A stretch of 64,000 bases of DNA from Pecten maximus. Taxonomy: Eukaryota. The stretch spans positions 11,780,001 through 11,844,000 of the forward strand of contig NC_047019.1 in NCBI RefSeq assembly GCF_902652985.1, in the 5' to 3' direction. The notes under the pieces were generated by a model. The model had not been told where the DNA came from. It did no database searches and saw only the letters and a program-made list of their open reading frames with translations. Both the position numbers and the translations under genes were made by a program. Each line of letters starts with the position of its first letter. The first letter of the stretch is position 1. This document shows, in pieces, positions 3,697-62,735 of the stretch.

Positions 3697-6600
3697 TTAG
3701 CATGAACGTTCCATTTTGTGATAAAACAATAGATACGCGTCGGAGCAAATGGGATACCCATTGTCTGGACTCACTCGCGTGACAATAGAATCTGTGCAAT
3801 GGTACCATGTACTTGAACGGTCACGTGCATGACCACGTGTGTCGTTGTCTCTGTGGGTTGGGGTAGCAAGGTCACGCTGACCTTTCAGTGTCTGTACATA
3901 TGACACATAATGACCACCTTCGATAGTCCCTAGATGGGAAATAATGGCGTATAACTTGTATGTAACTAAGGATTTTTCGCCCTGAAAAAAAGAAAAGAAA
4001 AAAGAAACATTAAAAACATTGCATTCGTTGTCATACATTGGGGAATGATGCAGACAGTTCAAAAGTGCAGCTTATTTAATAAAGCTAGTTTCAACATTAA
4101 ATGTCAGAGGATAAACAAAATAAATGCGTTTTTTTTTTACTTTAGATATCGATATTAACCACTTACTGTATGGAGCTGTATTTTCTTGTTGTATGGAACC
4201 AAGGTTTGTAGTTTTTCTAATTTCACGAGTCCATTACTTGTTCTCACCTTTGAGAAATAGAGAAGCAGCGCATAGAACAGTATATAAATAATTTTTACTG
4301 GGGCCGTCAGTAGCAAATATAGACATTGGTGTTGAGTTCAGGTTGAAATCCCTATCAGTTTACAACATTACATTGACTGATGTTCATGACCACTGAATGT
4401 CATATAAGTATACGTTAAAGGTGTAAGACTTTATAAGGAAAGTACATTTTTACATTGGTGAAGTCTTTATACGGAAAGTACTTTTTTTACATTGGTGAAG
4501 ACTTTATAAAGATAGTACTATTTTACATTGGTGAAGACTTGATAAGGAAAGTACTGGTTTACATTGGTGAAAATACACACCTCTTTAAATCTTGCCAGTT
4601 GAAGGATAAAAATGCTGGGAGCTCTCTCAAGCAGTAACTCTTTGATATACAATTTTCCAGCCCCTGATTTCTGACCTGTAACAGTAAACTACACTTTAAG
4701 CCTATCCACACTTTTAATTCAATTCCTTATCAATAAAATGGGAGATTTCTCCTGGATCGGTGCCAGGACCCAGTAAAGGAGATAGGGTTAGTGTCTTCAA
4801 ACGACGTCTCCTTTGATGCATTCAAAACATTTAAAAAGACTTCATTTCGCGTATTCGTGTCTAACGATTTTTTCGTGGCGGTTTAATTTGGCGATTTGCA
4901 ATCATAAAAGGCATACTGTACCTGTAATTGAAACTATTTCGCGTCGATTAATTTTGCTAATTTTAATCGCCCGCGAAATACGTCCAAAATAATTGCACGC
5001 GAAAGTTCGTTGGTTATTAGTAGTGAAGGAAAATGAGAGCTTGGATTATGCCAAAGATTGTCACTGCAGTATCGAATTGTTGGATATCATTTCTAGTATA
5101 AATTGAACAAAACGTCAGCAATTCAGCCTAGTGACAGTCTGTTACCCAAAATCTCCTTTGAACAAAAACACCGAAATTTACATGTCAAATTTCAGAAGCA
5201 TGGTGTTGGGAAAAGATAAATCCGGACAAGTTACACGCACTAATTTACAATGATCTTGTTTGTACTTAACTGACTATACTTGTTTGATGCTGTATTATAC
5301 CATCCTTGAAGGCGCATTTCCCGCCATTCCTAGCCCACATTATCGTCTTAAGTCTAAAGAGTAGGTAATGTACAGTTTGCTTGCTGGTTTTAACGTTCCG
5401 TGAAGAGCCGAGGTCATTTTGAGGTGGGTATCATTGTAGTAGTTGGTGACAACCTCACTGAACAACAAACGGGAGGCCCATCCAGAGCATTGATCTAACT
5501 GACTGAGCTATCGCGGCCCCTCCTCAAATGTACAAAATAAACATACATATTTATATGTAGATATGATGCCCTTCCTTTTTTGCTGTAATTGGACTTCAAT
5601 ATTATTGCCAAATCTCATAAACTCGTGTCAGAGTTAATGCATTACCTTTACTACACGATCGACACAACATATTGGAATCTGCCAACCTTTCCTTTCGGAA
5701 AAGGAGCTGTATACCATTATCCACAGATTTCTAGAATAATAAATTGAAGAAAAAAAATGTAAATCATCACAACGATATCATTATATACCATCTCAGTCTA
5801 ACCTCTAAGTGCTCATGGTGTTAACATAGAAATCAAAACATATTTTGTACGTGATACAGAACAAGTTTAAATGATAACTATGGTATTCGGAATATGTTTT
5901 TTCTTTGATGCACAAGACCTAATATGTTGAACTTGTTGATTATAGGTTACATTTACAGGTATAATATGCTTAAAAACATTGCACATTTTATTGCATTCGT
6001 TTATTTGATTTCTATTGGAATGGGATAACAGTTTGATGATATGCACATGTTGGCCCTAACTAACCATACATCATGGTCTCATGGTTCATGACGATGGCGC
6101 TTTTGGCGATATCTTTTTTTTTTTTTTAATTTTTTTTTCTTTCACTGGTTAATACAGTCTATGAATGGATTGCAGTTATAGTCATAGTATCTTAAGCAGA
6201 ATATCTGAGTTTCACAATAAAAAACAAAATTGCCCATTTTCGTATGTTTTGATCATTACCTCAGTGACAGGAATACATAACGATGTGAAGTCCTGAAGTT
6301 CGGAACACTCTTTCTGAAAATCAATTAAAAATAATTCTCAATTCTGTGGATCATGTTAAGGAGTCTTTATAGCATTGCCAGCCATGAAAATAAACTATAT
6401 TGAGAAGTCAAAATAGATAGACTTACTTGCATACATTTTGCGCATTCAAATCGATTCTTTATCTGTCCCGTGAATAACTCCATACTGTCTAAAAGATAAA
6501 AAAAAAAAAAAAAAAGAATATTGAAATACACACACACTTTTATAATTAACATATGATATCGAACGAAACGAACATAATGATAAACATATAAATTGTTTTA

Positions 6601-9600
6601 TATTTTACATATCGTATGGAAGAGAAAGGAGCACTTCAATACACATACATTTCTATATATCACATATACATAGCAAGAAGTATTGAAATACACATACATT
6701 TTTATATGAAGCATATTATTATATATATTTTTAAGTATAACAATTTACATATTTTTTATATGGATTATTTGATTTCTAAAATGAGTATTATCATACACAT
6801 ACCAAGTGAGTCTTAATTTTCCTATTTAACCTGTAATATCGAAAAGTAAAGTGTAGCTGGGAAATGCTATCTCAACCACGCTCTGCAGATAGGGCGTAAG
6901 AATTGTACCTGCTGCCCCCATCGCATGATCGTAAGAGGCGACTGAACTTTTGTCACCTTGTCAATGCCTCACTTTGACATTTAGTTGAGCGTTCGCCCCT
7001 GTGAGGAAGGCTTTGGATTCTGTCCCCTGGCCGAGACATACCAGAGTCTTTAAAAATGGTAGTTGCTACTCCTGCTTAGCGCTCAGCATAATAGGAGTAG
7101 GACGATTGGTTCGCCCGTTGTCAGTATAATGTAACCGGGTGGGGTGTCCTGTTGGATGTCTTCGGCAGTTTGCTTCAGTGAGGTAGCACTATAAATCGGC
7201 AAAAGTTCTGGACGTACACAAGGAGACTTAACACGAACATACAGCAGCCTCCCAAAACACATTTATGCACTCACCACATGCATGCATATCGCACTCACGG
7301 GAGGCTGTTCTTAAATGACCTTTTTTTTAAATCATAATCATGCGTGCAAACTATAGACATTAAAGTATGAACCTTTTCCCAGGTCTTCTCTCAAAGCTTC
7401 AATCAGACACAACAGAAAGGAATGGCAGTCGTGCTGTTTCCAGAAGGAAAAGTCATCCCCACTACAGCGGAAAATATACAGATAGAAAAACATTAACCTA
7501 CCCACTGAAATAGTTTAACTATTTTCCTACAATAGTAAAGAGAGACAATACGAACAAAGAACACTTTCACTGTAGGGGAAAACTGTAATTTATAAATTTC
7601 TGCTGATATATAATTCATTATTTGATTTGAATATTCTATGTACATTATTGTATCATAATCATACGTTTGTCACACGATAAATATTGTTTGATAACATGAT
7701 GTTCCAACGAAAACTGATCTATGAATTTGCTTTTATTCTTCAACATAGTTTCTTCCTTTAATCCATGGTTTTTTTCGTTCATCATATGATTTGTACCAAA
7801 AAGATATAAAAATTGCACTGTTTTAATATATAACACATAAACATCGCAGAGGAAGAGCTCACAGATCTAATGTTCGGGATAATTTTATAAGTCTTTTCGT
7901 GACTGCATTTCATATATATTTGATATATTTTGTCATCTCTATTTATCTCTATTAGTATTTTTCGCTGTAAGTAATAATGATTGATATATATATACATATT
8001 GCCACATTATCAGTTACCGTCTGATGACTTCAGCTTGCAATGCTTCTGTACTACTTTGACCCAGTGCACCATTTACATCTACAATGACTTCTAAAAGTGT
8101 GCTTGCCAGATACTTTTGTTTACTCTGAAATAAAATTAAAAAAACAACTTCTATGACACTAATTTGACATGAACAAGCATATGCGTAACATCACAAATTC
8201 ACACGATTTACTAATCTAATTGCTATGGTTATTGATGTGTTGTTTACATTAGTTATTTTAAGGATTTTCTTTGTTTGGACGAATCTATATAGTAGAAAAT
8301 ATCATAACACAACACTAATCAAATTTCAGTTGTTGTTGTTTTATTTAATATCTTTGCTTTCAATTGTGAGGCGGTCAGAAATGGCACCAATACCCCCACG
8401 AAATACTGGAATAGATAATTAAATCAAATAAAACATTTTTATTTTTCTAACATTACTTATTTTTAATTTTTTATTTCTTAATTATTTTTGTACTTTTATT
8501 TTCCCAATACTAGCTATATTTTAATTTATGATTAATTCCAATTATCGATTAATTAGCTTTTTGCAACATAAGATGATGAATATATAATTTTATCATAATA
8601 CTAAGTACAAAGACAAGTTGTTCAGGACTTAAGTGAACGGTTCTGAGGAACATAAAGGTCTGCTCTGAGTGTGAACCTTACCTTACTGCAATAGTCATGC
8701 ACATCCTCAAAAAATCCTGGCGTTTGTGCTAACACCTGTAAAATAATAGGAAAACATTCAGATTACAGACCAGATAAGCTTAGCAATACTGATAAAGCGC
8801 TTTGTGTTTTCAGCAATACGAAATAAAAGGTTTTAACATCATCATCGTCGTTGTCGTCGTCGTCATTATCATCATCGAGGAATATATGTAGTTGTCGTCT
8901 ACAGGTAAATATCTTAAGGTAAATTATTATTTGTAAATCAGTCAGAACTCTTAAGTAGTTAGTACTACAGGTGTTCGACGGAAGTTATATATCAAAACAA
9001 ACATGACGTTTTTGTGATAGTTTATACATCTTTTAAAAATATATGCGTGACAAATTAGTAATAGAATGGTTACCTGTACAACAGCGTTGATGGCGCATGT
9101 CAATTTTGAGTTTTTTAGCCCCTATGTAAAAGAAACAAGTTTATGTTAATATTTCAGGTGAAGGGTAATATCAGATTTTATATTCAGATACAATATGTGT
9201 CTTAAACGTTATCCGTCCATAAATTGTATTGACAAAAAGGAAAACAACACCAAACCAATTCATTCTCTCTTTAGTTCTAAATGTTTAATATGTTACTTTT
9301 CGGAGCCGTTCTATTCTATTTTCGTCATTAGTTGATATATACGTACCCTTATTTCATATCTTTGGCTGTACTGATCATGAACGTCAGGTCCTTGTTTTGA
9401 AAGTACAGCTTCGTGTTCATACCGACGGTGATGTGCTATGAATGCGAAAGGGTTAAGTTTAATTTTCTCCTATATCGTAAAGCATGTATTAGGAGAATTT
9501 TTAGTTGCTTACTGGTATACCGCATACATGATTCCGGCTTTTTGCTAGTTGTTGTCTCGGAGACTATAGTCAATGTTCTGTCGACGTGAAAACTCAAATG

Positions 9601-12469
9601 ATAATGCTCATTTCTACCGGGTGTCTTAAAAACTGTCCCTGTTATAACAACTAAACTAAGAATCCGTAAAGTTTAAGGGTACTTGCTGATGTTAAAGTAT
9701 TTGTTGGAAAACAGAAGATACATACCGTTTAGGATACTTGGCAGGACCTGCTCGTTGTTTTTAACACTATCCTAAAACACAAATATATAGATATCTCAGT
9801 AGACGATTTGCTAACAAATATGTCATTGGTATTGGTGACGTCTGGTAACAGTCAACAAGAAATAGGATACATTCATTTCCTATGGGTTATGGCAAGCCGT
9901 TTGGGTTTTTACCTATTAAATACAGATATCTGTATTCAAAATAAAAATATCATTATTAATATAAAAATTAAAGATATCTTTAATTCAAAGAGAGATATCT
10001 TTAATTTAAATAGAGATATCTTTAATTGAATTAGAGATATCTGTATTTGAGTTAGAGATATCCCTATTTAAAATACAGATATCTCTAATTAAACACGAAA
10101 TAGAGATATCTCTAATTCAAATACAGATATATCTAATTCAATTAAAGATATCTTTATTTCAATTAGAGATATCTGCATTTCATTGTAAATAAATATATCT
10201 GTATTTAAAATAAAGATATCTTTAATTCAAATACAGATATCTCTAATTCAAATACAGATATCTCTAATTCAATTAAAGATATCTCTATTTCAAATACCGA
10301 TATCTCTTATTGTTGTAGAAATACAGATATCTTTATTTTGAATACAGATATCTCTATTTGAATTAAAGATATCTTTATTTGACATGAAATAGAAATATCT
10401 GTATTTAACCATCAAAATAGGAAAAACGACTGCTCCCTTGATTCTCCCTTTTGCGCATGACGGAAGTAAAGCAGTAGTGACGCAAAATGGCGGGAAATGC
10501 AGACCGTGTGCTGCTTTCAATGGTACTGCGTATAGCCGCAACAGTTCGCTCTATTTTCCGTAGAACAGTTGCCATGTTCTGTTCTTTAGAAATCCCCTCC
10601 AAGTAGCAAGTTCATCGGTTTATACCTACATCTCTCATGCATGCATATGGGATCCGGATAGTCCAATTTAATTACAAGCGTTTCGTTAACATTGATCAGG
10701 ATTAGGGAGTAATCATTATTTTCTTTGTGTTTCAATATTAATCTTCGCACTGAGCAAACACGTGTAAATACAGATATCTTTAATTCAAATAGAGATATCT
10801 GTATTTGAAATAGAGATATCTGTATTGCAAAGTAATTGCAGATATGTCTAATTCAATTAAAGATATCTCTATTTAAAATAGAGATATCTTTAATTGAATT
10901 AGAGATATCTGTATTTGAATTAGAGATATCTGTATTTAAAATGAAGACATTTCTATTTAAACAAAATTAAAGATATCTCTATTTAAAAAAGGGATATCTT
11001 TAATTCAGATAGAGATATCTCTATTTTAAATAAAGATATCTTTAATTGGACAAGAATTAAAGAAATCTCTATTTAAAATAAAGATATCTCAATTACAATT
11101 AAAGATATCTGTAATTCAAATAGAGATATCTTAATTTGAAATAGAGATATCTGTCATTTAAAAGAAGATATCTCTATTTTCAGTAGAAATAGAGATATCT
11201 GTATTTAAATTAGACATATCTTTATTTAAATAGATATATATTTATTTAAATTACAGATATCTCTAATTAAATAGAGATATCTTCATTTTAAATAGAGATA
11301 TCTTTAATTAAATAGATATATCTCAATTTCAATTGGTAAAAACCCAAACGGCTTGCCATAATGGGTTGTAATTAAGTGGATGTTGTAATATGTACTTTTC
11401 GATGATTAAGAGACACTTTTCCAGAATTGCCATGGCTGTTTTATTTAACGTATTACGAATCACTATAAATTCATTTTTTATATATATTTATGTATTTATG
11501 ATCTAGCGAAGCCCATGTTTCAATATGAAATCCTAAAATGGCTGCTCCCTTAAATTATTACTTTTATTATTCAAAGAAGTCGTGGTTCAGAAACAATTTA
11601 CAAGTGAAACATGATCATTTGTGGAACATATCTCTTAGCTACTCAGTCGAAATGATGGGCTATTGACCAATACAATTACTCATAACAATCATTCGTATAC
11701 TCTTTATGTCTTTACCATTACCAACAGAAGAACAAATATATAACTCATCTAATATTTGCTTATGGTTATCATTATTGTAAAATTGCTATAGAATGGATAT
11801 TATAGTATATGTTTGACAACAAGTACTTACTATGTTGAGCAGTTTGCCATATCTATGACATATTAAACATTTGTAGCAGTTTGTTAGCCTGCTTCCGTGA
11901 ATTTTACTCTTCATTGTCATTCCTCTCTTACAGTATCGGCAGTGTATGTGACGACATGCTTCAACCAGAACTGGATCCTGTTTGAGTATCGAGTTTGTAT
12001 TGTTCTATTATACACTGAACAAACACAAAAAACAAAACAAAAGCACGATATCTGAAATTGTCTCATAGTGGTGCAATTTAAATTACAATGTAGTTTTATC
12101 GAGATAAGGGGTTAAATTAACATAATCTGATAATCTCGACCACAAAGTCCAAGAAAAAGATAATTTTGCATGAATAGGTATACTGATTATGCAGTTTTTT
12201 GACTGAATAAATCGGCAAAATGCATGAATAAATCGAATATCTATTGCAATATTAAAGAAAAGAAGAGTTTGAGATAATTTTGTTTGCAGTATTTCTTTGC
12301 TCTTCTGCCTAAGAAGGGTTTTTCAGGCACACATAATGCTAAGTTGTCAGTCATTTCTTATCAAATGCATTTTAAATAAAAACAAAGCACATGCCCGATG
12401 ATAAAATTATACACTTACTGTCCCTGCGTCCATTTTACAGAAATCACAGTGCAGCGGTCCGGACGCCAT
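3697..12469 (-). CDS. Gene 1: RING-finger (C3HC4) + USP/peptidase C19 deubiquitinase fusion, ~472 aa, 15 coding exons
   Basis: Phase-consistent GT-AG exons in transcript order: 12419-12469, 11831-11977, 9726-9771, 9513-9638, 9347-9435, 9074-9121, 8682-8735, 8018-8124, 7373-7461, 6427-6488, 6260-6313, 5646-5730, 4581-4675, 4167-4247, 3697-3981. N-terminus MASGPLHCDFCKMDAGT|DPVLVEACRHIHCRYC...YKCLIC is a RING. Cys box GLKNSKLTCAINAVVQ|VLAQTP; QHDCHSFL; CAKC and CRSC zinc pairs; APSIFILQLARF; His box YKLYAIISHLGTIEGGHYVSYV...WYHCTDSIV...AYLLFY. Confidence 0.85.
4422..4572. repeat. ~33-bp tandem repeat, ~4 copies, intronic
   Basis: Unit ACATTGGTGAAGACTTTATAAGGAAAGTACTTTTT repeated in the intron next to exon 4581-4675. 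Confidence 0.8.
5375..5521 (-). mobile_element. Internally deleted tRNA-derived SINE
   Basis: The minus strand starts GGGGCCGCGATAGCTCAGTCAGTTAGA (A-box-like). It ends AAATGACCTCGGCTCTTCACGGAACGTTAAAACC, similar to the tail of the SINE at 49096. Confidence 0.55.
6880..7321 (+). mobile_element. SINE, 5'-truncated and possibly composite, in a gene 1 intron
   Basis: GC-rich block with a tRNA-like remnant (GTTGAGCGTTCGCCCCTGTG...CCCCTGGCCGAG). Its 3' end CTTAAATGACC is shared with the SINEs at 15370 and 49096. Confidence 0.55.
9888..11360. mobile_element. Non-autonomous TIR DNA transposon, IS3EU-like, with AGATATCT subterminal arrays
   Basis: Perfect 26-bp TIR TATGGCAAGCCGTTTGGGTTTTTACC / GGTAAAAACCCAAACGGCTTGCCATA. 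6-bp TSD ATGGGT (9882-9887 and 11361-11366). Dozens of ~20-bp AGAGATATCT repeats on both arms surround a unique core (~10410-10770). Confidence 0.85.
11831..12469 (-). other. RING-HC (C3HC4) domain exons of gene 1
   Basis: The spliced peptide has C-x2-C-x13-C-x-H-x2-C-x2-C-x20-C-x2-C spacing. It is split by a phase-0 intron (donor gtaagt at 12418, acceptor cag at 11978). Confidence 0.85.
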
Positions 12470-12512: not shown

Positions 12513-12571
12513 GAAAACGAAAGTAAAACGATGTTTAATTATGTATTCCATGTTGAAACGAAACCGAAAGT
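12513..12571. promoter_or_regulatory. ISRE/IRF-binding motifs upstream of gene 1
   Basis: GAAAACGAAAGT (12513-12524) and GAAACGAAACCGAAAGT (12555-12571), 45-100 nt upstream of the ATG. Both match the GAAAN(N)GAAA IRF consensus. Confidence 0.7.
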
Positions 12572-15369
12572 ATCACCATGTGTGTGACTGTGCGGTAAAA
12601 CAACCTTGCTGGTTTTCAGAAATAGCTAATTTTATTTTTGCCGACACATCATCACTCTATATATAAATCTACGTCATCACTCTATATATAAATCCACGTT
12701 TTCAAAATTATAAATAGCTCTACCTGTGAGGTATTCTCGGAAGTTGAAATTTATATATCAAGATAGGTTGTTGGATATATAAATACATTAGTCTACCAAG
12801 AAAACTTGTCTTCCAAGAAAACAATTTTTCAATATTATTACAGACGTCATATCCGCCAGGTGCTTGACTCTGTATAGGTTAACAGGTGTACGATTCCATA
12901 AAGCGATAGCTATTTCAATTGTTGTCTGTTCACAGATATAAGTCTAGTTATACCAAATATTGTAACAAGCTGTGAGAAACCTTAGCAGTTTGAGTGTCCC
13001 TTGTATGGTCACCAGGTGCGAAATTTTAAAGTATAAAATACAGTGCATCTTGTTTTCCATACATCGAGTCTATAAACAATTCAACATATAAGATGACGAA
13101 ATGCAAATTTGATGAGACAGTTCAATGGTAACGATCGGTCAGCTAAATGGGCCAATGTATTACACGTAAGGAACGTTTTCTTGAAATGCATTATACAAAT
13201 ATACATAAATGTATTAATTTTTTTATTTATTAATTTATTTATTTTTATAATTTTGTGTATATAATGTATTTCATCTGATAGCATATACCGGTATACATAA
13301 ACACATTGATTTAATTTATCAATAATGAACTCAAAGACTTTATCAATAAAGCTTTTATTTTCCCAATGCACGTATATTAACATACTATATTCTTGTCATG
13401 CCTTCAATACACAATTGATTACGAAGGTAAGGGTACATAATAGGCATAGCGACTACATCAACATATTCAAACTATAGAGTATGTTTACGCACATGCCAAT
13501 ATAGAAATATCAGGCGGCACAAACAAGGAAAGCTGTAAAACACGTGCCATCCCTGTAGATGACGTAAGGATTTATTTATAGTTACAATAGTATTTATTTA
13601 ACTAAGCAGAACATGACATATGAAAACATGCATGCAAAAGTACAGAAAACGTACGTATGCTGATCCTTCTAATCAAATACCCAAACCTCTGAAAATACAT
13701 TGACAACTTAAGGATTTATTTATATTTCTCTTGAACATTTTATAATTCTCATATATGTTGTTGCTTTAATGTATATTAGAAGTTTTTTGTTGATTAAAAA
13801 AAAAGATCACTAAATTAATGCACATATTTTAATATGTTTTTATGATTTCTTTTTACCAATGGCCTCTCCTGGATTTTCACGCTTTCAGTCCCTATCAATG
13901 TTAGCACGACCTATTAGGGATATTCGACAGATACGTGGTATTACTGAATTTTAATTACCAGTGTGTTTGTGGAACCGTTCGTGATAATCTTTGTTATTAT
14001 TACCACACGAGTTTAATATTTGCTATCAAGAACAATTTTAGCGACAATGCATAATAATTTGCGGTATTGTATATGATCAGTGATTGTCTTATATGCTCTT
14101 GTGTTGATCAAATTGAACATATTCCAATTAGGTGCGCATGTATTTCTGCCATTTCTGTAGTATTTGATAAACTGAAATTGTATATATTTCCGTAAAGTTT
14201 GAGGGTACTTGCTGATGTTGTTCAACACTATGAACCACAATACATCTATCAATGTCGATTAAGACTGCGCTTGTCTGCTTTTGACTGGTCCTATGTAGCA
14301 AAACGGTTCATGCCTAAAGTTTTAAAATTAAGAATGAAATCAAAAAAATATAAGTGGGCTTAAATTAATTATAGAAACGGTATTGCTCTTCGCCGAATAC
14401 TTAACAATTCTGAAACTTTTAAAACTTGAATAATTTTACTTACTGGAATAAGGTTAATTTGATGGTATAGTTATCTGTCATAAAAGGTAGGGATTATGGA
14501 AGATCTTATGTATTTTATAAACCTTATAAATATATTGTTGATATATGCTATATATCGTTGGTTAAGGCTTCTCGTTAGCTGTGTAATGTGATAAGAAGGT
14601 TACATGTTAAAAAGGTTAAACAGGAGTGGCATTTACATCATTGTGGAGCGATCATAATTTGCCTTAATATTGTGTGATAGTTGTCCGACAAAATGGAATG
14701 GTATAAACTTTTTTGGTTTATTTTTAAACATATTTTCCTGATACTTACTTGAGGTAATTATCTCCCTTTAACCGACAGGTTTGAATTATGAAGTATGAAT
14801 GTTTGAATGATATTATTTTTCGCATCTATGATCTTGTCAGGGTATCGGGTAGACCAATCACTGCATCATTGAAACGCTCGTTTGAAAGAACTAGATTTGG
14901 TGTAGTGGTGTATACTGTGTGGAGGGCTGGGATTAGCCATTATGTACAATATATGTCCTCAGACAGGAGAGCTCACTTTCCATACATACCATACATACAA
15001 AATCAGCACTTTTTCTTATCGTTCATTTCTCAAAGCAATCGCATATAAGTTTCATATACATTCACTGTTTACTCCTTTTGGTTACCCGAGCTTTATTTTA
15101 AACTTTCTTTTATTTCAGTTCTAGCAATTATTTGCTAAAATCTAGACTTACCATTTACCTAACCTTCTGAGACCTGGGAACTCCTTTTTGGTCGTGGAAT
15201 TATGTGAATTTAATTTATTATAAAATAGCATTGATGAAGAATCAATATAAACTTGTTTTTCTATCAATTGCATACGATATGATAGAGATGTACTATCCAT
15301 AATAAATCGGATTCAAAATAAACGTTTTCTAGCTTTTATAAAACCGTCCCCAGTGAATTGGTATAAGTT

Positions 15370-49318: not shown

Positions 49319-49489
49319 TTGTCAATATAAAAGACTCCTCCAATGTATACATATTTATAGACTGATTATGCATGTAGTACATTTCTCACCTAGATTTTCA
49401 TGTAGTAATGCTAATATATACAAATATTACACGTCGTTACTGTACATGTAAGTTATCTGATGTAATTGTACAAAAAACGAACTTTAAAT

Positions 49490-51992: not shown

Positions 51993-52482
51993 GTTTAGCT
52001 TAAGAGACAATTCCTCCCAGAGGCAGAGGGGCGGGTCCCAATCAGAGAAGTCAAAACTGGTTATCATTATCGAGATTGAATGCTTTTCAACATAATTGAT
52101 TTTGATCTTTGAAACCATAAAGCTTAATGTTAGTTAAAAGAATGTGTTGACTAGAGTTCATTGGTACACTGAGTGACAGATCTAAAACTGGGGAAGTATT
52201 TGTAAAATCCAGGTGAGCGATACAAACCTGTTAACGTTAGACGCTTATAAGTTGACGTGTAGCGTGTCTTGATACAGGGGAAGTAACTCCTATGGAAATT
52301 TGTACCATTACAGCTGCATTATATGGATATTGTCACCAACACCAGTGATTATGACTATATACACGTGCACATTGGTGAATCGTAGGATTGCCAATAAATT
52401 CCTAAGTTTGAATCAAGTAGTTACTATTTTCTTTTCTTTCGTTTTCAGACTGAAATTTTGTATATTTTCACATTTTTTCATA

Positions 52483-53540: not shown

Positions 53541-54941
53541 AGATATAACTACATGTAAATAGATTTTTGTCAATGTTTCTTTATTACAATATTTATAAAT
53601 TTTATGGCAGGAAAACGGAATTTACTTGCAATTCTGAAAAGTTACTACAAGAATGGTCATGGGTATGGAATGCGGTCACTGGCACGGGATGCGTTTTTTA
53701 TTTTGTTGATGAGAAATACCATTATACATGTAAATTAACTGTGTGTATCACCATTATATTTATAAGTTTGTTTTTTCTTTATTCATATTTGTTCTTCCAA
53801 TAAGGTTTTTCCCTCATCAATTAGGATTAATCATTTCTATCTTTTTATGAGATATTAAATTTCATGTATATTTGTAGGGTACTTAGGATTTATATACATT
53901 TGTCATGCTATTATGTGTTATGAATACTTATAGTCAACAGACATCTATGTTTTTCTCCTTTTTCATCTGAGCATTATTATTGTTACATTCTTTACACTAT
54001 TATAGTGTCGCCCCGACCCGGGTCGACGCGAACACATATCGGATCCTCATGCATCTTCTCTTATATTTCCTCCAAATATCTTTTTCCAGTCGACCTGGTT
54101 TTTCCTTTGTTCTTTTTCTGTTCCTAATACATCTTTGCTTTTCTCTTTTCTCAAATTTCTGTTATCTCTCTATCTCTTCCTACCCAACAAAACTGATTAA
54201 TCGGATGGTGCATTACTCTTATGAATATGTAGCTACCTCTGGCCACCTTCACACGTATTTCTCTAGTTATTATTTTTATCCTCCTTAGTGGGTTGTTGCA
54301 CTGATACGTGGAGGTGTTCCATTGGTACATTTTACTGCAAAACACATGGTATTGGTAAAAGGTTATACTTTACCGGCAAGTGTGATTCTTTTTTGGATGT
54401 TTAAAACAGCTGTGTATTCAAGTGTACTTTTCATTTATCTAACATGTATGCAAGTCTTTGTGAAGCAGAACAGTATAGTTTTTCTTTTATTACTTAAATT
54501 TGTGCTGTCATGTGATGACTTTGACAGTCGTGGTCCGACTGTATGTAATTCTACACCTCCTTATTCAAGTAGATATCAAAATCAAACTGTTAACTTTGAC
54601 CATTTAAAAAAGTGTATTAATTCACTAATTATGTTTGTGTTTTTATGCTTTCGAAATACCCAGATTTAGACTTTCTGTTATATGGTAATCAAGAAATGTC
54701 TTTGAATATTAATTATGAAGTATTCTTATGTGTTCAACATTTCATAAAGGACAGTAACAGGTTTTAAGAAGTCAATCGATTTATATATTAAAGTAAAACT
54801 TGTATCCATTGTGTCTTAAATGAGAATGTTTATCCTTACAAATTGTTTGTTATATGCGTTATACGTTATTGAATGTATACCATTGTTGCTTGTGTTATTT
54901 TGTACATTTGTTTTTCTTTTTTTATTGCCCATCCATTAATT

Positions 54942-55010
54942 ATCTCTCTCCCCCCTCTCTCTCCCCCTCACTCTCTCCCCCTCTCTCTCCCCTCACTCTC
55001 TCCCCCTCAC

Positions 55011-55053
<43 letters not shown>
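54942..55053. repeat. CT-rich microsatellite
   Basis: (CT)n and CTCTCTCCC runs. Confidence 0.95.
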
Positions 55054-55058
<5 letters not shown>

Positions 55059-55485
55059 TTTCTATAAAAATAAAAATCTATTATTTAATTCTAAATATGT
55101 ATTTTATAGCATTTTGTAATTATTTATATGTCATTGTGTTAGGAGAGGGCGTTTATAAGTTGTCATAACTTGTGCCCAATCCTGTTGTACATTTGTTACA
55201 ATAAAATACGTTTAAACTCAAACAAGAATATTTATGAAGAACCCATTCCGGCTTCTTCACGTTATTGGAAGGTTTCAAAAGATGTTGAAAATCATTCTAT
55301 TATGGGTAGATCATATATTCATTGTGGCGATATCACCTACCTATTTAGTGATATCACTTTAACGATTGGATGGTGTCTCTATAATGAATCAGTGATATCA
55401 CCTAATCTTAACGTTAGCTGAAAACGCTCTTTCACAATAATTGTTGATATGTTAACGTTCTTATTGTAGCAAAGAGAAGATCAGT

Positions 55486-58400
55486 ATGTTCCCGGTACAG
55501 GTGAGTACTAAGCTTTGCTACCTGGTCTAACATGTGTATATTAATCCCTCACTTTTCGTCTTAATGTCATTAATGAGTACTTTTCAAAGAAACCGTCGAT
55601 AAAGACCATAGCTTTTTAAGTGGCGATATACCATCCAATTTTCAAAATCAACAATATGTTAATTGAAATATCACCGCAATATCATTAACACAATAACGTA
55701 TTTGATTTATATCAATATTCCCGATTCATATTAAAACAAGTAGAAAAAAGGTGATACTGCACGTTAAGTTAGGATACGAACCCTGTTTATCTTGTATTCT
55801 CCAAATGTTTTGTTCTGTTATGGTGTCAGTAGAAATGCATGTCTTCCTGTTGTGTAGTCCTGGGGGAGGGGGAGCTATTTTTTTTTATTTTTTTCATAAT
55901 GAGTCACTCTTTCAAAATCTACTGAAAAATAACCAACTGAAATCAATCATAATAGGCGATTAGTACGCATAGGAATATCATACACATTTTTGACACATAA
56001 TAATGCAATATTAATGTTTGGTAATAAACTTCTGCATTTAAAGGCATCGTCGGTAAGAAATCCAATCAGGTTGATACCGGATGAGTATCCCTGGCAGCGT
56101 TGTACTCAACACGCACATTACTTGGTAAGTCACATTACATGAGTGTAAAAGTAAGCTCAAGTCCCAATGCATATCTTACTGTAAAGTTAGGATCAAAGTT
56201 CAACTGCCATCATTTCAAGTGATCTAATCTAGTCGCCCTTTGTCCTTTGACATGCGTCGTGCGTCGTCCGTTCTCAGAAACCTTTGAACTTGAACCAATT
56301 TTATAAAATGATATGGTCCCTACCGACCATGAACTGAGTGGTGAGCAAAATGGGGTCAAATTGACTGATTGTTTTTTAAATCTGCCTAAGACTCAAACTA
56401 GGTAGAATCAAATACTCGTCGGAGGTCTTAATGTGCATTATCAATATCGTGAATTTCATGATCCTCTGGTCTCACGTTTGCCCCATGGGAGGGGATGCAT
56501 TTTACAATAGTTATATAGGGAAATCCATCATTTGTTTGGAATAAATTCTAATTTGGTTAGAATTATCAGCATTGGATGACAGTTTGGTATGCATATGTTG
56601 GCCCTGATTCACCCCTAGAGGTTCATGGACGGACCCCAAAAATGGCCAAATGACTTCAATTTCTAAAATCTTCTTCTCATGATCCAAATAAGGTAAAATC
56701 AAATACTCTTTATAGATGGAAGGGTCTTAAGGTGCATTGCCAAATCTGTGAATTCCATGACCCAGAGACCATGCGTTTGCCCCTAGGAAATGGGGGTTAA
56801 CCTTTACTATAGTTTATATAGGGAAATTACATTTTGGACTATCATTTGCTGAATTTCTATTGAAAAGGCGGGGCCTATAAGGATGTAATTGGCTGATAAG
56901 GTCCAATAGGCTTCATGTTATCAATGCAATTATTGACACAGGTAAGCACACCTTACTAAAACACATCAGTTAAGAAAACAAATGCATTTTTGCGCTACTT
57001 TAAAAATCAAAATACTCGTCATTCATTGTAACAACGACAGGCAAAACAATCCCACAACTGATTGAATAGCAAGACAGCTTCTTCCAATTCGGAGTTGTCC
57101 TGGAATTAAATAAAATATATTTCTACGATAACGTAATAGTTTATTCCATTTCGGTGAGATATTTTAAACATGTTGTTTTGGCCTGCATAATAATTTATAA
57201 AAAAAGATCGAAGTTTAACGAAGCAGGTCCAAAAATCACTATAAATGGAACTATTAAACACATTTACGTAACAGACGTGTACCCATAATGTTAAATTTTA
57301 CAAGCCAACCAATCACTTCAATGATGTTGAGTCACGTGACCCGTTTTACGACGTCTTTACGACACAGAAACACGAGTTTTGTACAATTTAGGTGGAAAGT
57401 CTCCCGCGGGACGCGGTTTCACTTCAAAGTCGAAAAACGTGTTGAAAGCGGTTAATATATGAGCAAAAAAGCCACGATGCAATGACAGATGCATACATAT
57501 ATTAACAGGTTTCAAGTTTGAAGTAAAACCACGTCCCGCAGGGAACTTGCCCTCAAATTGTACAAAACATATGTTTCTGTGTCCTTCGTGTCTCAGCCTC
57601 ATTAATGTGATTGATTGGAATGGAAACTTGCAATAATAGTATAAGTTGTCACATGATTGAGTTTTACCTCCATATATAGTGATTTCTCTGACCTGTGAAG
57701 TGTAAACGTCAATTTCGTTAGTAAGGCCAAAAAGAGAGTACACGCCGGAAATGTAGATACAATGTAGTACTAGTTACACGTCAAATTTTGTTATCTTACA
57801 AACATCAAGGACAACGTTGTGCCTTTATGCCTATAGTTCCAGAATTAAATCGGAATAAAAAACACACCTGGACATGTTTATGAGACAGGCCTGGCGTCAG
57901 CCATCTTTGCCAGCCAATACTTCATAATACGAAGTTTTGATACCTTGGCAAGTGAAAATAGGAGTCCTCGGAGAACAATAATTGTCAACTAGTAGAAAAG
58001 TAGAACATTTAATGCATACATTTTGTATATGTAATTTTTATATTTTAGATTCAATTTCAATTACCCTGTTGCCATAATGTGTGTGTCATGTGCCTTACTC
58101 ACCTGAACAAGTATTTCCACACTTGTGATGCCATCAGTCACTGCAGCTATGGAGGACTTATACCAATGCGACATATTAATGACTGCATATTGTATTATGG
58201 AGAGGAGGTATAAGAAACTTAAAACTAAATAGATGAATTTACACATATAGTATTTAATATATATCCAAACTAAATGTCGATGATGAAAAAACAAACAAAA
58301 CAATAAGAGTATTAAAGAGATATAAAAATGACATGTTGTTCGGAATATAACGATCAATTTTTAGATACCTGTGAGCATTTCTTAAACTGATCGCGATTTA

Positions 58401-61400
58401 TTTTTGCGAGATCAGCTGTAATACGAAGATCAAATTAAATTGAATTGCCTGTAGTAACGCAATCTTATGCCTCTAATGATAAATTCATATTAGATTTAGC
58501 GAAATATCCTTATCCCTCCTACTAGTTTTTTTTTTCAATTTCAAAACATGTTTTATTTTGTTCGCAGACTAACAACTTGCGCTCCATCAGTATCACGACT
58601 GAGCACAATGGCTGCTATTTACGTCACAATTCAAAGGTACATGTATGTGTCTATTTCACACCTGGCTTGGCTATTAGTGCAACGGTGTTAACCGGAGACA
58701 TTTTATAGTGGTCCGTTTCTAATGAAGACATTTACACCTTACTAGATTTGAAATAGGTAAGGTACTTTCCATTCAAACTATATATTATCCAAAATGTGAA
58801 ACCGCTGCATATGCAAGATACACGAATTCCGTGTAGAACAATCAGATGAAATATTTCCCATATTCAGCATGTACATTCCTGGCTTTGGTAATTATAACAA
58901 TAATGACTTTACCAACCTAAAGAAAGGACAGCTTAAAAGTGTCCTTATGATGTCACGATTCGGATCACGTCATCACGTCATCACTATATGCCGTGTTACC
59001 ATATCGTAATAAATTGAGCAACGTCACCAGCTTTGTCGAATATTTGCAACATCCGAGATGGTAGGGTGTAGTAAGTTATTGTTTGGAATCTTAACGACAG
59101 AAAAAAGGTGTTGAATTTTTTTTATCAATAACCTCTATGTGTTACAGAGATATATTAAACTTCAGGAATACTTTAATTAAGGATATTCCCGGGATATATA
59201 TACCCCTGTTTATATCACGTAGGGTTAACCATAAAATTTCTATAATCTTCATCAAAATACATCGCTCGAAACTATCTAGTGTACTAAAATCAATTTCAAG
59301 TTTTTAAGGACATAGCTGTTATATAGCAACACATCATCAATATGTTAAATGTCTAAAAGTGAAAATAGATGACCAAGCAAGGTCTTTTTTAAGGTGTTTT
59401 TTTTTCTATAAGCTATTTAATGCATTCGAATGAAGACAACTTAAACAACAAAGGTGCAAAGTTTTGCTTCTCTTGGTATGTTAACTGTCTGTAAGAAACT
59501 TGAATGATCTAGCTACCCAACTCAATAGGAAAAAACATCGCTAACTAGACACTCAACTATTCTCATGATTACCGTGGGTCGGTGTTTCAAACTATGGTTG
59601 AGTATGATTCACAACTATATACTTGTCCTACTTGAAAACTAAAATATGTCATAAGTTGATCTGGCCCAGTTGTTCAAAAGGTGATTAGCTTAATCACTTG
59701 ATTAGTGAAAATCTCATTTCTCCTTTACTTAAAAATCTGTGTATGTATATTCCTTAAAATAGAGACTGATGAGTGTTATAGTTTCATAAAATGTTGTCAA
59801 GTTAGTTTTACAAGAAATGATTTTATCAGGTTTTTAAATTTGTTGTTAAACTGTGATTAGCCTAATCACCCTTTGAAAAACTGGGTCCTGAAGATTATAT
59901 TGTCTTGTTTGTAGGTCCAGATACGATTGTTGTGCGGTCAGAAGTACTGTATGAAATGTCTCCGGGAAAAGTTATCTGCAACGTGGTCATCTGAATATAA
60001 AATTTGTGAAAAATGTACGGGTCTTATTGGGAGACCTGAAATTCACGACTGGATGGAGGAATTGAATCGAATGGTAGGTACACAAATTAAAGCATTGACT
60101 CGATTCTAAACAATGAAGCTAGTACATGGCTCACTGTACAATTTGTTTGTTACAAAATGTAAAACTTCTAAACGTTATTAACGCAAGGACCTTAATAGTG
60201 TTAATGTTATGATTCATTAAACAAGTAATTCTTTTTCTTTTATTTATACAATGATAATTAAAAATTGCATGACATTGGCTGGATTAAGAAACAATGGGCA
60301 ATTAGCAATACGTCTTTCGTTTGCAAAATTATGCAAATGATGTATAGTGATTCTGTTCCATTTTTACAGCAAACAGCATTGGTGCATGAATGGAGACTTA
60401 TAAATAGTGAGGAAGTTTGCGAAAAGCACAGACACAGAAAGGTTCGTTTGATAGATACAACAGAATAAATAAATCCTACAAATTATACAATATTTGCTAG
60501 GTGATAGTTATTTCTCTCAGATGAAATATTTGAATGATAAAATATCGCTTAGCGATTTACAGTACGACACATGCAATTAAATTACACATTACACATCAAA
60601 TTAGTTGGATGTACAGTTTTATTATATACAATAGCGTATGTTGATAAGCTGGTGGCAGTGTTGTGTTTTATATACTTTGTAAGTATTGGTGTACGAATAT
60701 GAATTTGTATTGGTATTAGCAATCGTGTACATGATTGGCTAATATCATCATGTAGGCATTTTCGTGCTGTTCAACCTTATATCATCAAATTATCTTTCGG
60801 GAGATTACATTTCGATGTATTGGTAAGCAGCTTGATATATTTTCCTGCTTTCGAAGCTTTCAAGTCCGAATAGAGCACGTGGTCAGGCATGGATATTCCA
60901 TTCGCCATTTGAATTAAACAAGTCAGTGAATATGGTATCAATCCGGGGATGCAAACATAGGCTGTAGATAGGGATGTTACACTCAAAAAATGAATATTAC
61001 AATTAGAACATTGAAATCTGCAACTTAAAGGTAACATGTCCGCGTAGTTTATATCTCAAATAAAGAGCAACAATTCCCACGAATTCGTCCCCAGTATATA
61101 CATATATAAGTTTCATCTTAGCCTTTGTTGAGGTTTTCATCAAACACTCTTGAGTATAATTAACAACCATATACTTTTTTCGGTATTGGTTTTTTCCAGA
61201 ACTCTCATAAATGAACATAGCAGATATATAGTTTGTCTTTTCTTTTCAAAGGTACAAATAAAGATGTTGTGCGATACTGTATAGCATGTTTACATATAAT
61301 GAAATATAAACCACGTATCTGTGAAATGTGTTAAGATTGTATTCAGTGACTAGAAATAACAAGGCAGTCACGGAAAACAGCAGTCTCAGAACATTATATT

Positions 61401-62735
61401 TTTCTTGGCCATTGAAATCCTATGTTTATATTCTAAACACCATGAAGAAAATTATTGGTATTCCTTCAGTGATAGTTTGTTAACTTGCATGAAGATATAT
61501 ATATCAAATTATATGATAGTAATTAAAAATCATACATGTACGGTGTGTAACATGACATGTCTTTCATTTACGAAATTGATCAAATGATGCCTGGCAATTC
61601 TATTTCATTTTTCAAGGAGACCACATCGTTTCACGAATTGAGCTATTTAGATAGTGAGGTAGATAGCAAAGAGCAAAACTGCAGATAGCTTTTGTTTGAT
61701 TCATAAATATTGATGTGGCATAAATGAAGTAAATCCTATTAAACAACTTTACTTTGTGAAAAGGCACGGTGTGATAAAGGATAGTCAAAGACACAAGGTA
61801 TTAGCACCTTTAACACATATTTACAGATAAAAAAGTAGAGCCAATAGTGAAATAAACTGTATGTAATACCATCTAAGCCTTTACTAATGACTATGTTACA
61901 TGCAATCAAAAATTGATATCTTACCCTTTGTCCGTTATCCCGGTCCGTTCCTAAGTCGTCCATCATCCGTCAGATCTTTTAAGCAGGGCTTCTTTAGTCC
62001 GTAGCTGTGCGCACTCGATTTTGGGACTGAATGAAACAGTATTATGACAGAAAAGTTACCGTTTTATATTTTCATATTTGAAATTTGTTAAAGCTATTTC
62101 GAAAAGCGTTTTTGCTGGATCATTCTTAGATTTCACATATGGGTCCCTTTTGTTATCAAATATATATGATATGTAAACGACAGGATCCCTATGGGATTTT
62201 TTGTTTATTTTTCCAGAATAAAATATATTTGAGAATGGCTTTAATTTATTGTTATATAACCCGTATTGTAAACCTTCGTAATTTCGGTTAAATAGTAATC
62301 AAAATGTCATATCTAAACAATATCATTGTCATCGTCCTAAAACTTTATGTTGTAGGTGTGTTTGAAACTTTCATGCGGAAGACCACTTTGTCTTGTATGC
62401 ATTAGGTCTTTTATTCACATTATGGATACCCCGTTTGAAGGAAACCGACGAACCAGTATAAAGTGCAATTATTGTCATCTTTTTGTCGAACGGAGTGAAA
62501 TCCTGAAATTGCTTAAAGAACTTCCAAAGGTAAATCTACGTCTTTTAGATTAATTTGCAAGTAAGAAAAAATAGATCTATTGCGAAAAAAAGTGATCAAA
62601 TAATATTCCAACTAATAAACCGCTTTCTCTCTTTACACACTGTATAAGGAGTGATTGAGTTGACCTTACTTGAAAATAAACCTTTAATGTCATTTACAGG
62701 GTCAACAATCACTATTAGCTCTGTGGAGCTTTTAG
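55486..62735 (+). CDS. Gene 4: protein of three tandem RING-like zinc fingers, ~254 aa (putative E3-ligase-like protein)
   Basis: All exons are phase 0: 55486-55500 (MFPVQ), 56044-56124 (..CTQHAHYL), 58049-58207 (IQFQLPCCHNVCVMC..), 58568-58636 (..CYLRHNSK), 59915-60073 (VQIRLLCGQKYCMKC..CEKC), 60370-60441 (..CEKHRHRK), 62356-62529 (VCLKLSCGRPLCLVC..CNYC), 62700-62735 (GQQSLLALWSF*). The first and last exons are the least certain. Confidence 0.7.
56230..56870 (+). mobile_element. Degenerate HINE-like copy related to 17900-18920, in opposite orientation
   Basis: A GCGTCGT microsatellite is followed by reverse-complement matches to the 17900 core (gaatcaaatactc, gtgaatttcatgaccc, cacgtttgcccc, actatagtttatatagggaaat). 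Confidence 0.65.
57361..57582. repeat. Inverted-repeat (hairpin) element, MITE-like
   Basis: About 70-bp imperfect arms: GACACAGAAACA..GTTTTGTACAATTT..GCGGGACGCGGTTTCACTTCAAA versus TTTGAAGTAAAACCACGTCCCGC..AAATTGTACAAAAC..TGTTTCTGTGTC. Confidence 0.7.
59663..59888. mobile_element. MITE (PIF/Harbinger-like termini), ~225 bp
   Basis: TIRs GGCCCAGTTGTTCAAAAGGTGATTAGCTTAATCAC / GTGATTAGCCTAATCACCCTTTGAAAAACTGGGTCC. It sits just upstream of exon 59915. Confidence 0.7.

What the first reader, a model, noticed from the sequence alone, without database searches (positions are those of the whole stretch)
3697..62735. Candidate IRF-inducible ubiquitin writer/eraser cluster: RING-USP, C2-USP, repeat-USP and a triple-RING gene
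Seen: all four reconstructable genes are ubiquitin-system genes (three tandem USP paralogues with swapped N-termini, plus a divergent multi-RING gene), and each 5' region has clustered GAAAN(N)GAAA motifs. Established: these motifs are IRF/ISRE sites, molluscs have IRFs and an interferon-like antiviral response, and vertebrates have an IFN-induced USP (USP18) and IFN-induced RING ligases (TRIMs). Inference: this is a lineage-specific, co-regulated innate-immune ubiquitin-editing locus built independently from a USP16/45-like domain. I know of no description of such a cluster but cannot search the literature.
Basis: partly seen in the sequence, partly recalled or inferred. Interest (0 to 1): 0.9.

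Follow-up and report, generated by a model that had tools for sequence, protein, structure and literature searches.

The report
Scallop deubiquitinase cluster with interferon-type promoters
In the king scallop genome, three neighbouring, very different deubiquitinase genes (one fused to a RING-like zinc finger) and an adjoining array of RING-like exons carry dense interferon-response-type DNA motifs at their starts. The same motifs precede antiviral IFI44-like genes in this genome, so the locus is a good but unproven candidate for an infection-induced ubiquitin-editing unit.

Summary
The window is Pecten maximus, G000:C5:11780001-11844000.

**Genes.** Three tandem minus-strand USP genes are real, and all keep the catalytic Cys, His and Asp.
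- Gene A (3700-12469) is an NCBI-annotated 430-aa protein. Its first 66 residues have C3HC4 RING spacing, which is conserved in the Mizuhopecten orthologue.
- Gene B is the orthologue of a 1071-aa Mizuhopecten USP. The claimed C2 domain was not confirmed.
- Gene C probably starts with about 11 decapeptide repeats.
- Gene D is a series of RING-like second-half exons. The series continues at least 13 kb beyond the window.

**Motifs.** The motif claim holds statistically.
- AACGAAAGT occurs 6 times against 0.76 expected.
- There are four clusters of three or more IRF-type sites per 200 nt, against about 0.03 simulated.
- The clusters lie at the 5' ends of A and B, in intron 1 of B, and in the C/D intergenic region.
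- Gene A's sites are among the longest conserved blocks shared with Mizuhopecten.
- The B and D promoter segments are single-copy.
- The same motif pairs lie upstream of IFI44-like genes elsewhere in this genome.

**What is missing.** Induction itself could not be tested.

**Earlier notes.** This scan has unchecked notes of ISRE-like boxes at other immune-type genes of this genome.

The parts
3700..12469 (-). Gene A: RING-like zinc finger + USP deubiquitinase. It is the NCBI protein 'ubiquitin carboxyl-terminal hydrolase 2-like' of Pecten maximus, 430 aa, with 14 coding exons.
   Evidence: P0152 maps exon by exon at 100% with GT-AG introns. Pfam UCH E 1.5e-36. The orthologue P0151 in M. yessoensis is 56% identical.
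11831..12469 (-). The two exons that encode gene A's cross-brace zinc finger (12419-12469 and 11831-11977), separated by a phase-0 intron.
   Evidence: C3HC4 spacing is conserved in both scallops. Pfam RING models reach only E 0.025-0.033 on exon 2. ESM Atlas structural neighbours are B-box, RING and PHD at TM 0.39-0.46.
12513..12744 (-). Gene A 5' region. It holds two ISRE/IRF-E-like elements (12513-12528 and 12556-12573), a CRE-like ATGACGT (12671-12677), a TATA-like block (12707-12716) and a GAS-like TTCCGAGAA (12734-12744).
   Evidence: These are the longest perfectly conserved runs in the alignment with the M. yessoensis orthologue's 5' region (A1).
16427..40116 (-). Gene B: a long USP gene. 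USP-core exons are about 22848-22907 (Cys box), 21441-21525, 20352-20419, 20018-20110, 17465-17562, 17242-17356 and 16427-16675 (His box). A large linker exon lies at 24234-24638. The predicted ATG exon is 40106-40116.
   Evidence: Pfam UCH hits the last exon. Exon-by-exon conservation of 55-75% aa with the 1071-aa UCH gene upstream of the orthologue in M. yessoensis is shown. The part upstream of 24.6 kb comes only from my heuristic model and is unreliable.
40160..40296 (-). Gene B 5' cluster. Five IRF-type sites (three AA[AG]CGAAAG and two AAGTGAAAG) lie 40-180 nt upstream of the predicted ATG, followed by a kappaB-like GGATTTCC.
   Evidence: The segment is single-copy in the genome.
39296..39410 (.). 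A second, weaker cluster of three IRF-type sites inside the predicted intron 1 of gene B.
41495..48366 (-). Gene C: USP with an N-terminal run of about 11 decapeptide repeats. The heuristic model has 15 exons and 588 aa. The repeat exon is 47639-48059, the Cys box 45717-45767 and the His box 41495-41740.
   Evidence: Pfam UCH hits the last exon. Anchors are and the model. The Cys-box exon and the next exon are 51 nt each, as in gene A.
49490..49811 (.). Intergenic C/D regulatory block. It holds a kappaB-like GGGAAATTTCC (49490-49500) and three AAACGAAAG sites (49667, 49743, 49796), one of them next to an ETS-like GGAAGT.
   Evidence: The segment is single-copy. It is separated from gene C's predicted ATG exon by a tRNA-like SINE at about 49062-49321.
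49830..62553 (+). Gene D: a gene of RING-like modules. It has a putative non-coding exon 1 ending at the donor at 49976/49977, an ATG exon at 55470-55500, and module exons at 58049-58207, 59915-60073 and 62356-62529.
   Evidence: ORFs and shared C-x4-C-x2-C...C-x2-C spacing. Prok-RING_2 E 3e-4. The best PDB matches are RNF4, TRIM25 and RNF125, at E 0.02-0.6. Like modules lie beyond the window end (L024, L025).

Best explanation
This is a scallop-specific (pectinid) locus. Three old tandem duplicates of a USP deubiquitinase gene have each acquired a different N-terminus:
- gene A a RING/B-box-like cross-brace zinc finger;
- gene B a long unassigned region;
- gene C decapeptide repeats.

The three genes lie next to an array of RING-like-module exons.

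All three USPs keep the catalytic triad, so they are most likely active ubiquitin (or ubiquitin-like) proteases.

Genes A and B, and the C/D intergenic region, carry tight clusters of IRF-E/ISRE-type sites (AAACGAAAG, AAGTGAAAG) next to kappaB-, GAS- and CRE-like sites.

The most likely working model is as follows. After nucleic-acid or virus sensing through the RLR/STING-TBK1 route known in oysters, scallop IRFs, possibly with STAT and Rel factors, bind these sites and switch the genes on. The induced deubiquitinases and RING proteins then edit ubiquitin chains on signalling or viral proteins, acting either as negative feedback or as effectors.

Shown here: the gene content, the catalytic residues, motif enrichment, motif conservation, and motif sharing with IFI44-like genes.

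Inferred: IRF binding, induction, E3 activity and the substrates.
For: - USP identity and intact catalytic motifs.
- Gene A equals an annotated protein with conserved C3HC4 spacing.
- Motif enrichment and clustering at 5' ends.
- The longest conserved runs in gene A's 5' region shared with M. yessoensis are the ISRE-, GAS-, TATA- and CRE-like blocks.
- The A-B paralogue split predates the Pecten/Mizuhopecten split, yet both genes keep the same element type.
- The B and D promoters are single-copy.
- At least 4 IRF genes are present.
- The same elements lie 150-200 nt upstream of the ATG of an IFI44-like gene (L018) and upstream of a second one with TLDc plus P-loop exons (L020).
- IFI44 and viperin are virus-induced in oysters (PMC7460283). 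Oyster IRF activates ISRE reporters (PMC5869526).
- No such clusters occur in 40 kb of flanks.
Against:
- Transcription start sites are unknown. In gene A the sites may lie downstream of the TATA-like block, that is, in the 5' UTR.
- Gene C's proximal region has only weak sites.
- Scallop viperin shows just one such site about 130 nt upstream of its ATG, so dense clusters are not universal at antiviral genes.
- Only 2 of 7 IFI44-like genes show the exact motif pair.
- GAAA-repeat sites are also bound by PRDM1-type repressors.
- Of 16 non-satellite motif-pair loci sampled, most could not be assigned to an immune gene.
- Fast divergence (56% identity between orthologues) would equally fit reproductive genes.
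Confidence: 0.5

Rival explanations
1. These are ordinary lineage-specific paralogues with constitutive or tissue-restricted (for example germline) expression. The GAAA-rich boxes are bound by some other factor, or have no role in immune induction.
For: - Rapid divergence of orthologues (56%) and of paralogues (29-37%) also fits reproductive or otherwise fast-evolving genes.
- No expression evidence was obtained.
- Most sampled motif-pair loci had no recognisable immune gene.
Against: - Four clusters against about 0.03 expected, placed at predicted 5' ends.
- The exact elements are conserved between genera.
- The same elements occur at IFI44-like genes.
- kappaB-, GAS- and ETS-like sites occur alongside them.
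Confidence: 0.3
2. The sites are immune-type, but they act mainly as targets of a repressor (PRDM1/Blimp-1-like or IRF2-like). They would keep these ubiquitin genes silent except in particular cell states, rather than driving interferon-like induction.
For: The core AAGTGAAAGT (gene B) matches the overlapping PRDM1/IRF consensus as I know it from the vertebrate literature. This was not tested here.
Against: Nothing here separates activation from repression. The presence of the sites at IFI44-like genes favours the activating reading.
Confidence: 0.1
3. Part of the cluster is not functional. Gene C and/or the RING-like modules would be decaying duplicates or unexpressed exons, and only genes A and B would be real genes.
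For: - Models of C and D rest on my own heuristic gene finder.
- Two of the three gene D modules lack the His ligand.
- Gene C has lost one Cys pair of the USP zinc ribbon in the model.
- A protein search with a gene D exon found nothing.
Against: - Long open frames with canonical splice sites and conserved exon sizes.
- Gene C's catalytic residues are intact.
- RNA-labelled runs hold 9-13% of the sampled words of gene C's region.
- RING-like modules recur six or more times with preserved cysteine spacing.
Confidence: 0.15

Closest known systems
USP18 (UBP43), the interferon-induced USP of vertebrates
   Same: It has a USP-fold cysteine protease. Its gene is driven by ISRE elements as part of an antiviral programme, and it gives feedback on signalling. 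USP18 chains are among the PDB sequence matches of gene A (E 2e-8).
   Different: It is not an orthologue. USP16, USP2, USP8 and USP21 score far better (E 4e-16 to 2e-13). The scallop genes carry extra N-terminal modules and occur as a tandem trio. ISG15 specificity and induction were not tested.
A20/TNFAIP3, a ubiquitin-editing enzyme with DUB and E3 functions in one chain
   Same: In concept it resembles gene A: a deubiquitinase domain and a zinc finger of a ligase-associated type in one polypeptide, under an immune-type promoter.
   Different: A20 has an OTU protease and A20-type zinc fingers, not USP plus RING. There is no sequence relationship. E3 activity of gene A's finger is unproven.
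Interferon-inducible RING E3 ligases (TRIM family, e.g. TRIM25; RNF125)
   Same: Gene D's module exons align, weakly, with the second half of the TRIM25, RNF4 and RNF125 RING domains (E 0.02-0.6). They also align with several Pfam RING models (E 0.002-0.14). The modules are tandemly amplified, as many TRIM clusters are.
   Different: No B-box, coiled-coil or SPRY domain was found. There are several RING-like modules per gene. The His ligand is replaced in most modules. All matches fall below the curated thresholds.
USP2/USP8/USP21/USP16-type catalytic cores
   Same: Gene A's core has full-length Pfam UCH coverage (1-254 of 254, E 1.5e-36) and keeps the Cys box, the QQD box, zinc-ribbon cysteines and the His box. 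Genes B and C show the same boxes on separate exons, but in my model gene C has lost one Cys pair of the zinc ribbon.
   Different: No one-to-one orthology could be established. NCBI names for the scallop proteins vary (USP2-like, 27-like, 8-like). The Cys box is atypical in A and C: N-S-K-L-T-C and I-E-S-S-S-C in place of N-x-G-N-T-C.
IFI44-like genes of the same genome
   Same: They share promoter elements: AAAACGAAAGT pairs and ACTTTCACTTT, 150-500 nt upstream of the coding start.
   Different: The proteins are unrelated (TLDc + GTPase) and lie on another chromosome (C3).

Membership tests
USP/UBP deubiquitinases (Pfam PF00443) | Significant match to the UCH profile | tested here: met
   Last exons of A, B and C score E 1.6e-12, 7e-14 and 3e-13. 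Whole gene A protein scores E 1.5e-36 over profile positions 1-254.
USP/UBP deubiquitinases (Pfam PF00443) | Catalytic Cys (Cys box), His (His box) and Asp/Asn present | tested here: met
   Cys-box exons are at 9071-9121 (A), 22848-22907 (B) and 45717-45767 (C). The GGHY and C-[ST/A]-D-[ST] motifs are in all three last exons.
USP/UBP deubiquitinases (Pfam PF00443) | Isopeptidase activity | not testable with these tools
   Needs recombinant protein and Ub-AMC or di-ubiquitin assays.
RING finger (C3HC4), gene A N-terminus | Eight zinc ligands with cross-brace spacing C-x2-C-x9-39-C-x1-3-H-x2-3-C-x2-C-x4-48-C-x2-C | tested here: met
   The spacing is present in P0152 residues 8-59 and in the orthologue P0151.
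RING finger (C3HC4), gene A N-terminus | Significant match to a RING profile or a confident RING fold | tested here: inconclusive
   Pfam gives E 0.025-0.033 on exon 2 alone, below cut-off, and nothing on the whole protein. My AF2 model has pLDDT 34. ESM Atlas neighbours are B-box, RING and PHD at TM 0.39-0.46.
RING finger, gene D modules | Full set of ligands, including His at position 4 and the first C-x2-C pair | tested here: inconclusive
   His is present only in module 1 and is replaced by Q or R in modules 2 and 3. The first ligand pair lies on unverified upstream exons. Matches to RING models and RING structures are all sub-threshold.
C2 domain (PF00168), gene B | Match to the C2 profile | tested here: not met
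   No Pfam hit on candidate exons 37837-37962, 37472-37603 and 36763-36951. The M. yessoensis orthologue has only UCH on record. A C2-like beta-strand pattern was seen by eye only. The joined exons were not searched.
Interferon/IRF-stimulated genes | ISRE/IRF-E elements near the transcription start | tested here: met
   Clusters lie at 12513-12573, 40160-40296 and 49667-49811. Start sites themselves are inferred from ATG exons, not measured.
Interferon/IRF-stimulated genes | Induction by viral or nucleic-acid stimuli, dependent on IRF | not testable with these tools
The available runs are contigs without expression levels.
USP18 orthologues | Closest relationship to USP18 among USPs | tested here: not met
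   USP18 scores E 2e-8, against USP16 at 4e-16 and USP2 at 7.5e-15.

The most novel reading that the evidence does not exclude
Scallops have evolved their own IRF-driven ubiquitin-editing module. It would include a single-chain RING-USP enzyme (gene A) that can both write and erase ubiquitin, two further inducible USPs with different targeting N-termini, and an amplified family of RING-like proteins. This would be an invertebrate, independently assembled counterpart of the vertebrate USP18 / A20 / TRIM set. The shared AAAACGAAAGT-type element would define the scallop 'ISRE regulon', which also includes the IFI44-like genes.
Probability: 0.25. Interest if true: 0.75.

Novelty: new variant of a known kind. 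Interest (0 to 1): 0.55.

Why it matters
Molluscs lack recognised interferons, yet they mount an interferon-like antiviral response. What that response switches on, and through which DNA elements, is poorly mapped.

This locus offers a compact, testable set of candidate target promoters: single-copy, motif-dense and partly conserved between genera. It also offers a motif shared with IFI44-like genes that could be used to define the scallop IRF regulon genome-wide.

A USP fused to a RING-like finger is an architecture I could not find described in the held literature. If both halves are active, it would be a natural single-chain ubiquitin editor.

If the genes turn out not to be inducible, the locus is simply a fast-evolving paralogue cluster.

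Tried and rejected
**1. RNA evidence.**
No splice or expression evidence could therefore be obtained.
- After that I kept those places out of targeted queries. By oversight, the whole-window Rfam scan (no matches) included them.

**2. Structure of gene A.** AlphaFold2 on P0152 with a 3-sequence alignment gave pLDDT 34 and is unusable.

**3. Protein search with a gene D exon.** It found no candidates. The length filter excludes full-length proteins.

**4. C2 domain of gene B.** Pfam found nothing on the single exons.

**5. Heuristic gene models.** My gene finder gave a plausible gene C model. For the N-terminal half of gene B it strung together transposon-like fragments, so that part is not used.

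**6. Joined models.** Exons were searched one by one by reference.

**8. Literature.** Searches for induced USPs in bivalves, for ISRE motif work in molluscs, and for RING-USP fusions found nothing relevant.

**9. Transposon origin of the promoters.** Rejected for B and D, because both segments are single-copy.

**10. Specific USP16/45 ancestry.** Not resolvable from near-tied PDB scores.


Full report
**Origin of the window.**
- Gene A's last exon found a 72%-identical Mizuhopecten yessoensis protein.
- Searching with that protein's longer isoform found P0152, named 'ubiquitin carboxyl-terminal hydrolase 2-like [Pecten maximus]', 430 aa.
- P0152 matches the window exon by exon at 100%.
- The window is G000:C5:11780001-11844000 of a 918-Mb genome.

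**The three USP genes.**
- Pfam UCH hits the last exons at 3700-4071, 16430-16747 and 41498-41764, all on the minus strand.
- These exons are 29-37% identical to each other, so the duplications are old.
- Gene A has 14 coding exons between 12469 and 3700 with canonical splice sites.
- Homology-guided searches located the Cys-box, QQD-box, zinc-ribbon and His-box exons of B and C. The catalytic Cys, His and Asp are present in all three genes.
- Gene C's Cys-box exon and the next exon are 51 nt each, as in gene A. This points to conserved intron positions.
- Against solved structures, gene A's core matches USP16, USP2, USP8 and USP21 almost equally (E 4e-16 to 2e-13), and USP18 only at 2e-8. The data give neither a USP16/45 origin nor USP18 orthology.

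**The N-termini.**
- Gene A. Residues 1-66, on exons 12419-12469 and 11831-11977, have full C3HC4 spacing. The spacing is conserved in the M. yessoensis orthologue. Profile support is weak: Pfam gives E 0.025-0.033 on exon 2 and nothing on the whole protein. My AlphaFold run failed at pLDDT 34. The ESM Atlas model's nearest structural neighbours for residues 1-110 are B-box, RING and PHD clusters at TM 0.39-0.46. I therefore call it a RING/B-box-like cross-brace finger. Ligase activity is unproven.
- Gene B. Single-exon Pfam searches did not confirm the C2 domain, and the M. yessoensis orthologue has only UCH on record. Two exons (about 37840-37962 and 36769-36880) show a C2-like strand pattern by eye only.
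- Gene C. An ATG immediately followed by a donor (48366-48364) joins in frame to an exon (48059-47639) that encodes about 11 decapeptide repeats. My heuristic model gives 15 exons and 588 aa.
- These models come from a small gene finder that I wrote. It uses codon log-odds from gene A, simple splice scores and homology anchors. The N-terminal half of the gene B model is not trustworthy.

**Gene D.**
- On the plus strand, three exons of 159-174 nt (58049-58207, 59915-60073, 62356-62529) share the pattern L-x-C-x4-C-x2-C ... C-x2-C. They align with gene A's finger exon.
- The best PDB sequence matches of one module are the RING domains of RNF4, TRIM25 and RNF125, at E 0.02-0.6.
- The same kind of exon recurs beyond the window end, at L024 961-1218, L024 4773-5063 and L025 2895-3137 (about 1-13 kb past the end). 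These hit five different Pfam RING models at E 0.002-0.24, always over the second half of the model.
- 'Triple RING' therefore undercounts. This is an array of at least six RING-like modules, in one or several genes.
- The His ligand is kept in only one of the three in-window modules.

**Synteny.**
- In M. yessoensis (locus L001) a 1071-aa UCH gene, the RING-USP orthologue and an EF-hand gene follow each other on one strand.
- The window and its left flank show the same order: B, A, EF-hand.
- The A/B duplication therefore predates the split of the two genera.
- Whether C and D are conserved could not be checked.

**The motifs.**
- Counts against dinucleotide shuffles:
  - GAAANNGAAA: 15 against 5.2.
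  - GAAANGAAA: 14 against 5.7.
  - AACGAAAGT: 6 against 0.76, with five of the six at 12516, 40160, 40174, 49744 and 49797.
- With the IRF-E pattern AANNGAAAS there are four clusters of three or more sites per 200 nt, against 0.03 in Markov simulations:
  - 12515-12562, which is 45-100 nt upstream of gene A's ATG;
  - 40161-40288, which is 45-170 nt upstream of gene B's predicted ATG exon;
  - 39296-39402, in the predicted intron 1 of B;
  - 49667-49796.
- The last cluster lies between C and D. It is 1.3 kb from gene C's ATG exon and separated from it by a tRNA-like SINE at 49062-49321, which has a second copy at 15335-15601. It is about 30-300 nt upstream of a plausible non-coding first exon of gene D that ends at the donor at 49977.
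Only RNA data can decide this.
- The 40 kb of flanks hold no such cluster.

**Are the motifs functional?**
- Conservation. In an alignment of gene A's 5' region with its M. yessoensis orthologue (63% identity), the longest perfectly conserved runs are a GAS-like ACTTCCGAGAA, the ISRE core GGTTTCGTTT, a TATA-like block, the second ISRE-like element and ATGACGT.
- Copy number. The B and D promoter segments are single-copy, so they are not transposon cassettes.
- Trans factors. At least four IRF genes are present.
- Association with known antiviral genes.
  - A genome-wide search for two AACGAAAGT within 40 nt gave 139 matches, against 51 for the reversed control; many matches are satellites.
  - Of 16 non-satellite loci fetched, two are the upstream regions of IFI44-like genes. 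These show TLDc (Pfam 1.1e-8) plus a P-loop exon, and the exons are 65% identical between the two genes.
  - In L018 the pair lies 150-200 nt before the ATG.
  - L020 carries three ACTTTCGTTTT and one ACTTTCACTTT, the same element types and orientation as genes A and B.
  - A third locus precedes a fibrinogen-domain gene.
  - IFI44 and viperin are virus-induced in oysters (PMC7460283), and oyster IRF activates ISRE reporters (PMC5869526).
- Counter-weights.
  - Scallop viperin has only one such site near its start.
  - Only 2 of 7 IFI44-like genes show the exact pair.
  - Most sampled loci could not be assigned to a gene.

**What could not be done.**
There is therefore no RNA support for exon chains or start sites, and none for induction.
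- RNA-labelled runs do hold 9-13% of the sampled words of gene C's region. That is compatible with expression but is not proof.
The whole-window Rfam scan (no hits) included them by oversight.

**Verdict.**
- The gene-level observation is sound, apart from the C2 domain and the count of RING modules.
- The motif observation is sound and clearly non-random.
- The reading 'IRF-inducible ubiquitin writer/eraser cluster' is the best available explanation, at about even odds. It rests on promoter logic alone.
- The genes are already in public annotation under generic USP names. The held literature yielded no description of the RING-USP architecture, of the cluster, or of its promoter elements.
- Other first-stage notes of this scan report ISRE-like boxes at further immune-type genes of this genome. 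I treated those as leads and did not test them.

Noticed in passing
G000, at least 17 dispersed places (e.g. C1:12827588, C5:779379, C12:13026670); not in the window: A dispersed repeat family carries a 56-nt cassette: AAAACGAAAGT, then a palindromic GAS-like TTCCGGGAA, then AAAGTGAAAG. The reversed control pattern gave 0 matches. It looks like a transposon that spreads ISRE+GAS-type elements, as some mammalian elements do.
   Followed up: no
L018 (G000:C3:22815500-22825400) and L020 (G000:C3:10136400-10146300): IFI44-like genes (TLDc + P-loop exons) have AAAACGAAAGT pairs or triplets just upstream. Seven such GTPase exons occur in the genome, four of them in a tandem group at C3:22.66-22.84 Mb.
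   Followed up: partly
L024 961-1218, L024 4773-5063, L025 2895-3137 (1-13 kb beyond the window's right end): Further RING-like second-half exons of the gene D type lie here. The module array is therefore larger than the window shows.
   Followed up: partly
window 2534-2994 (also 916-1081): A single-copy, ORF-free block about 0.7-1.2 kb downstream of gene A's stop is 84% identical over 467 nt to M. yessoensis (L001 17863-18327). That is better conserved than gene A's coding exons. It may be a 3' UTR, a non-coding RNA or a regulatory element. Rfam found nothing.
   Followed up: partly
window 15335-15601 and 49062-49321: Two copies, about 76-84% alike, of a tRNA-like SINE. One lies between genes A and B, the other between gene C and the C/D motif cluster.
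   Followed up: no
window 18000-18900 and 56200-56870; 19232-20007; 50774-52133; 52500-53300; 1066-1756: Interspersed repeats shared between gene B's intron and gene D's intron, in opposite orientation. A long tandem repeat that is open in several frames lies inside gene B's intron. There is also an inverted repeat pair and two further tandem arrays.
   Followed up: no
L019 (G000:C15:24858300-24868200): An AAACGAAAG pair lies about 1.2 kb upstream of a gene with a thrombospondin-like exon and a fibrinogen C-terminal domain (Pfam 1e-41). This is a candidate immune lectin.
   Followed up: no
G000:C11:2824828-2838237 (L002-L005): This is the viperin locus. The exon matching model positions 101-159 occurs twice, at 2831385 and 2833980, which suggests a partial or tandem duplication. 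Only one AAAACCGAAAGC site lies about 130 nt upstream of the ATG.
   Followed up: partly
window 12734-12744: A GAS-like TTCCGAGAA upstream of gene A is the longest perfectly conserved run shared with M. yessoensis. This hints at STAT input beside IRF.
   Followed up: partly
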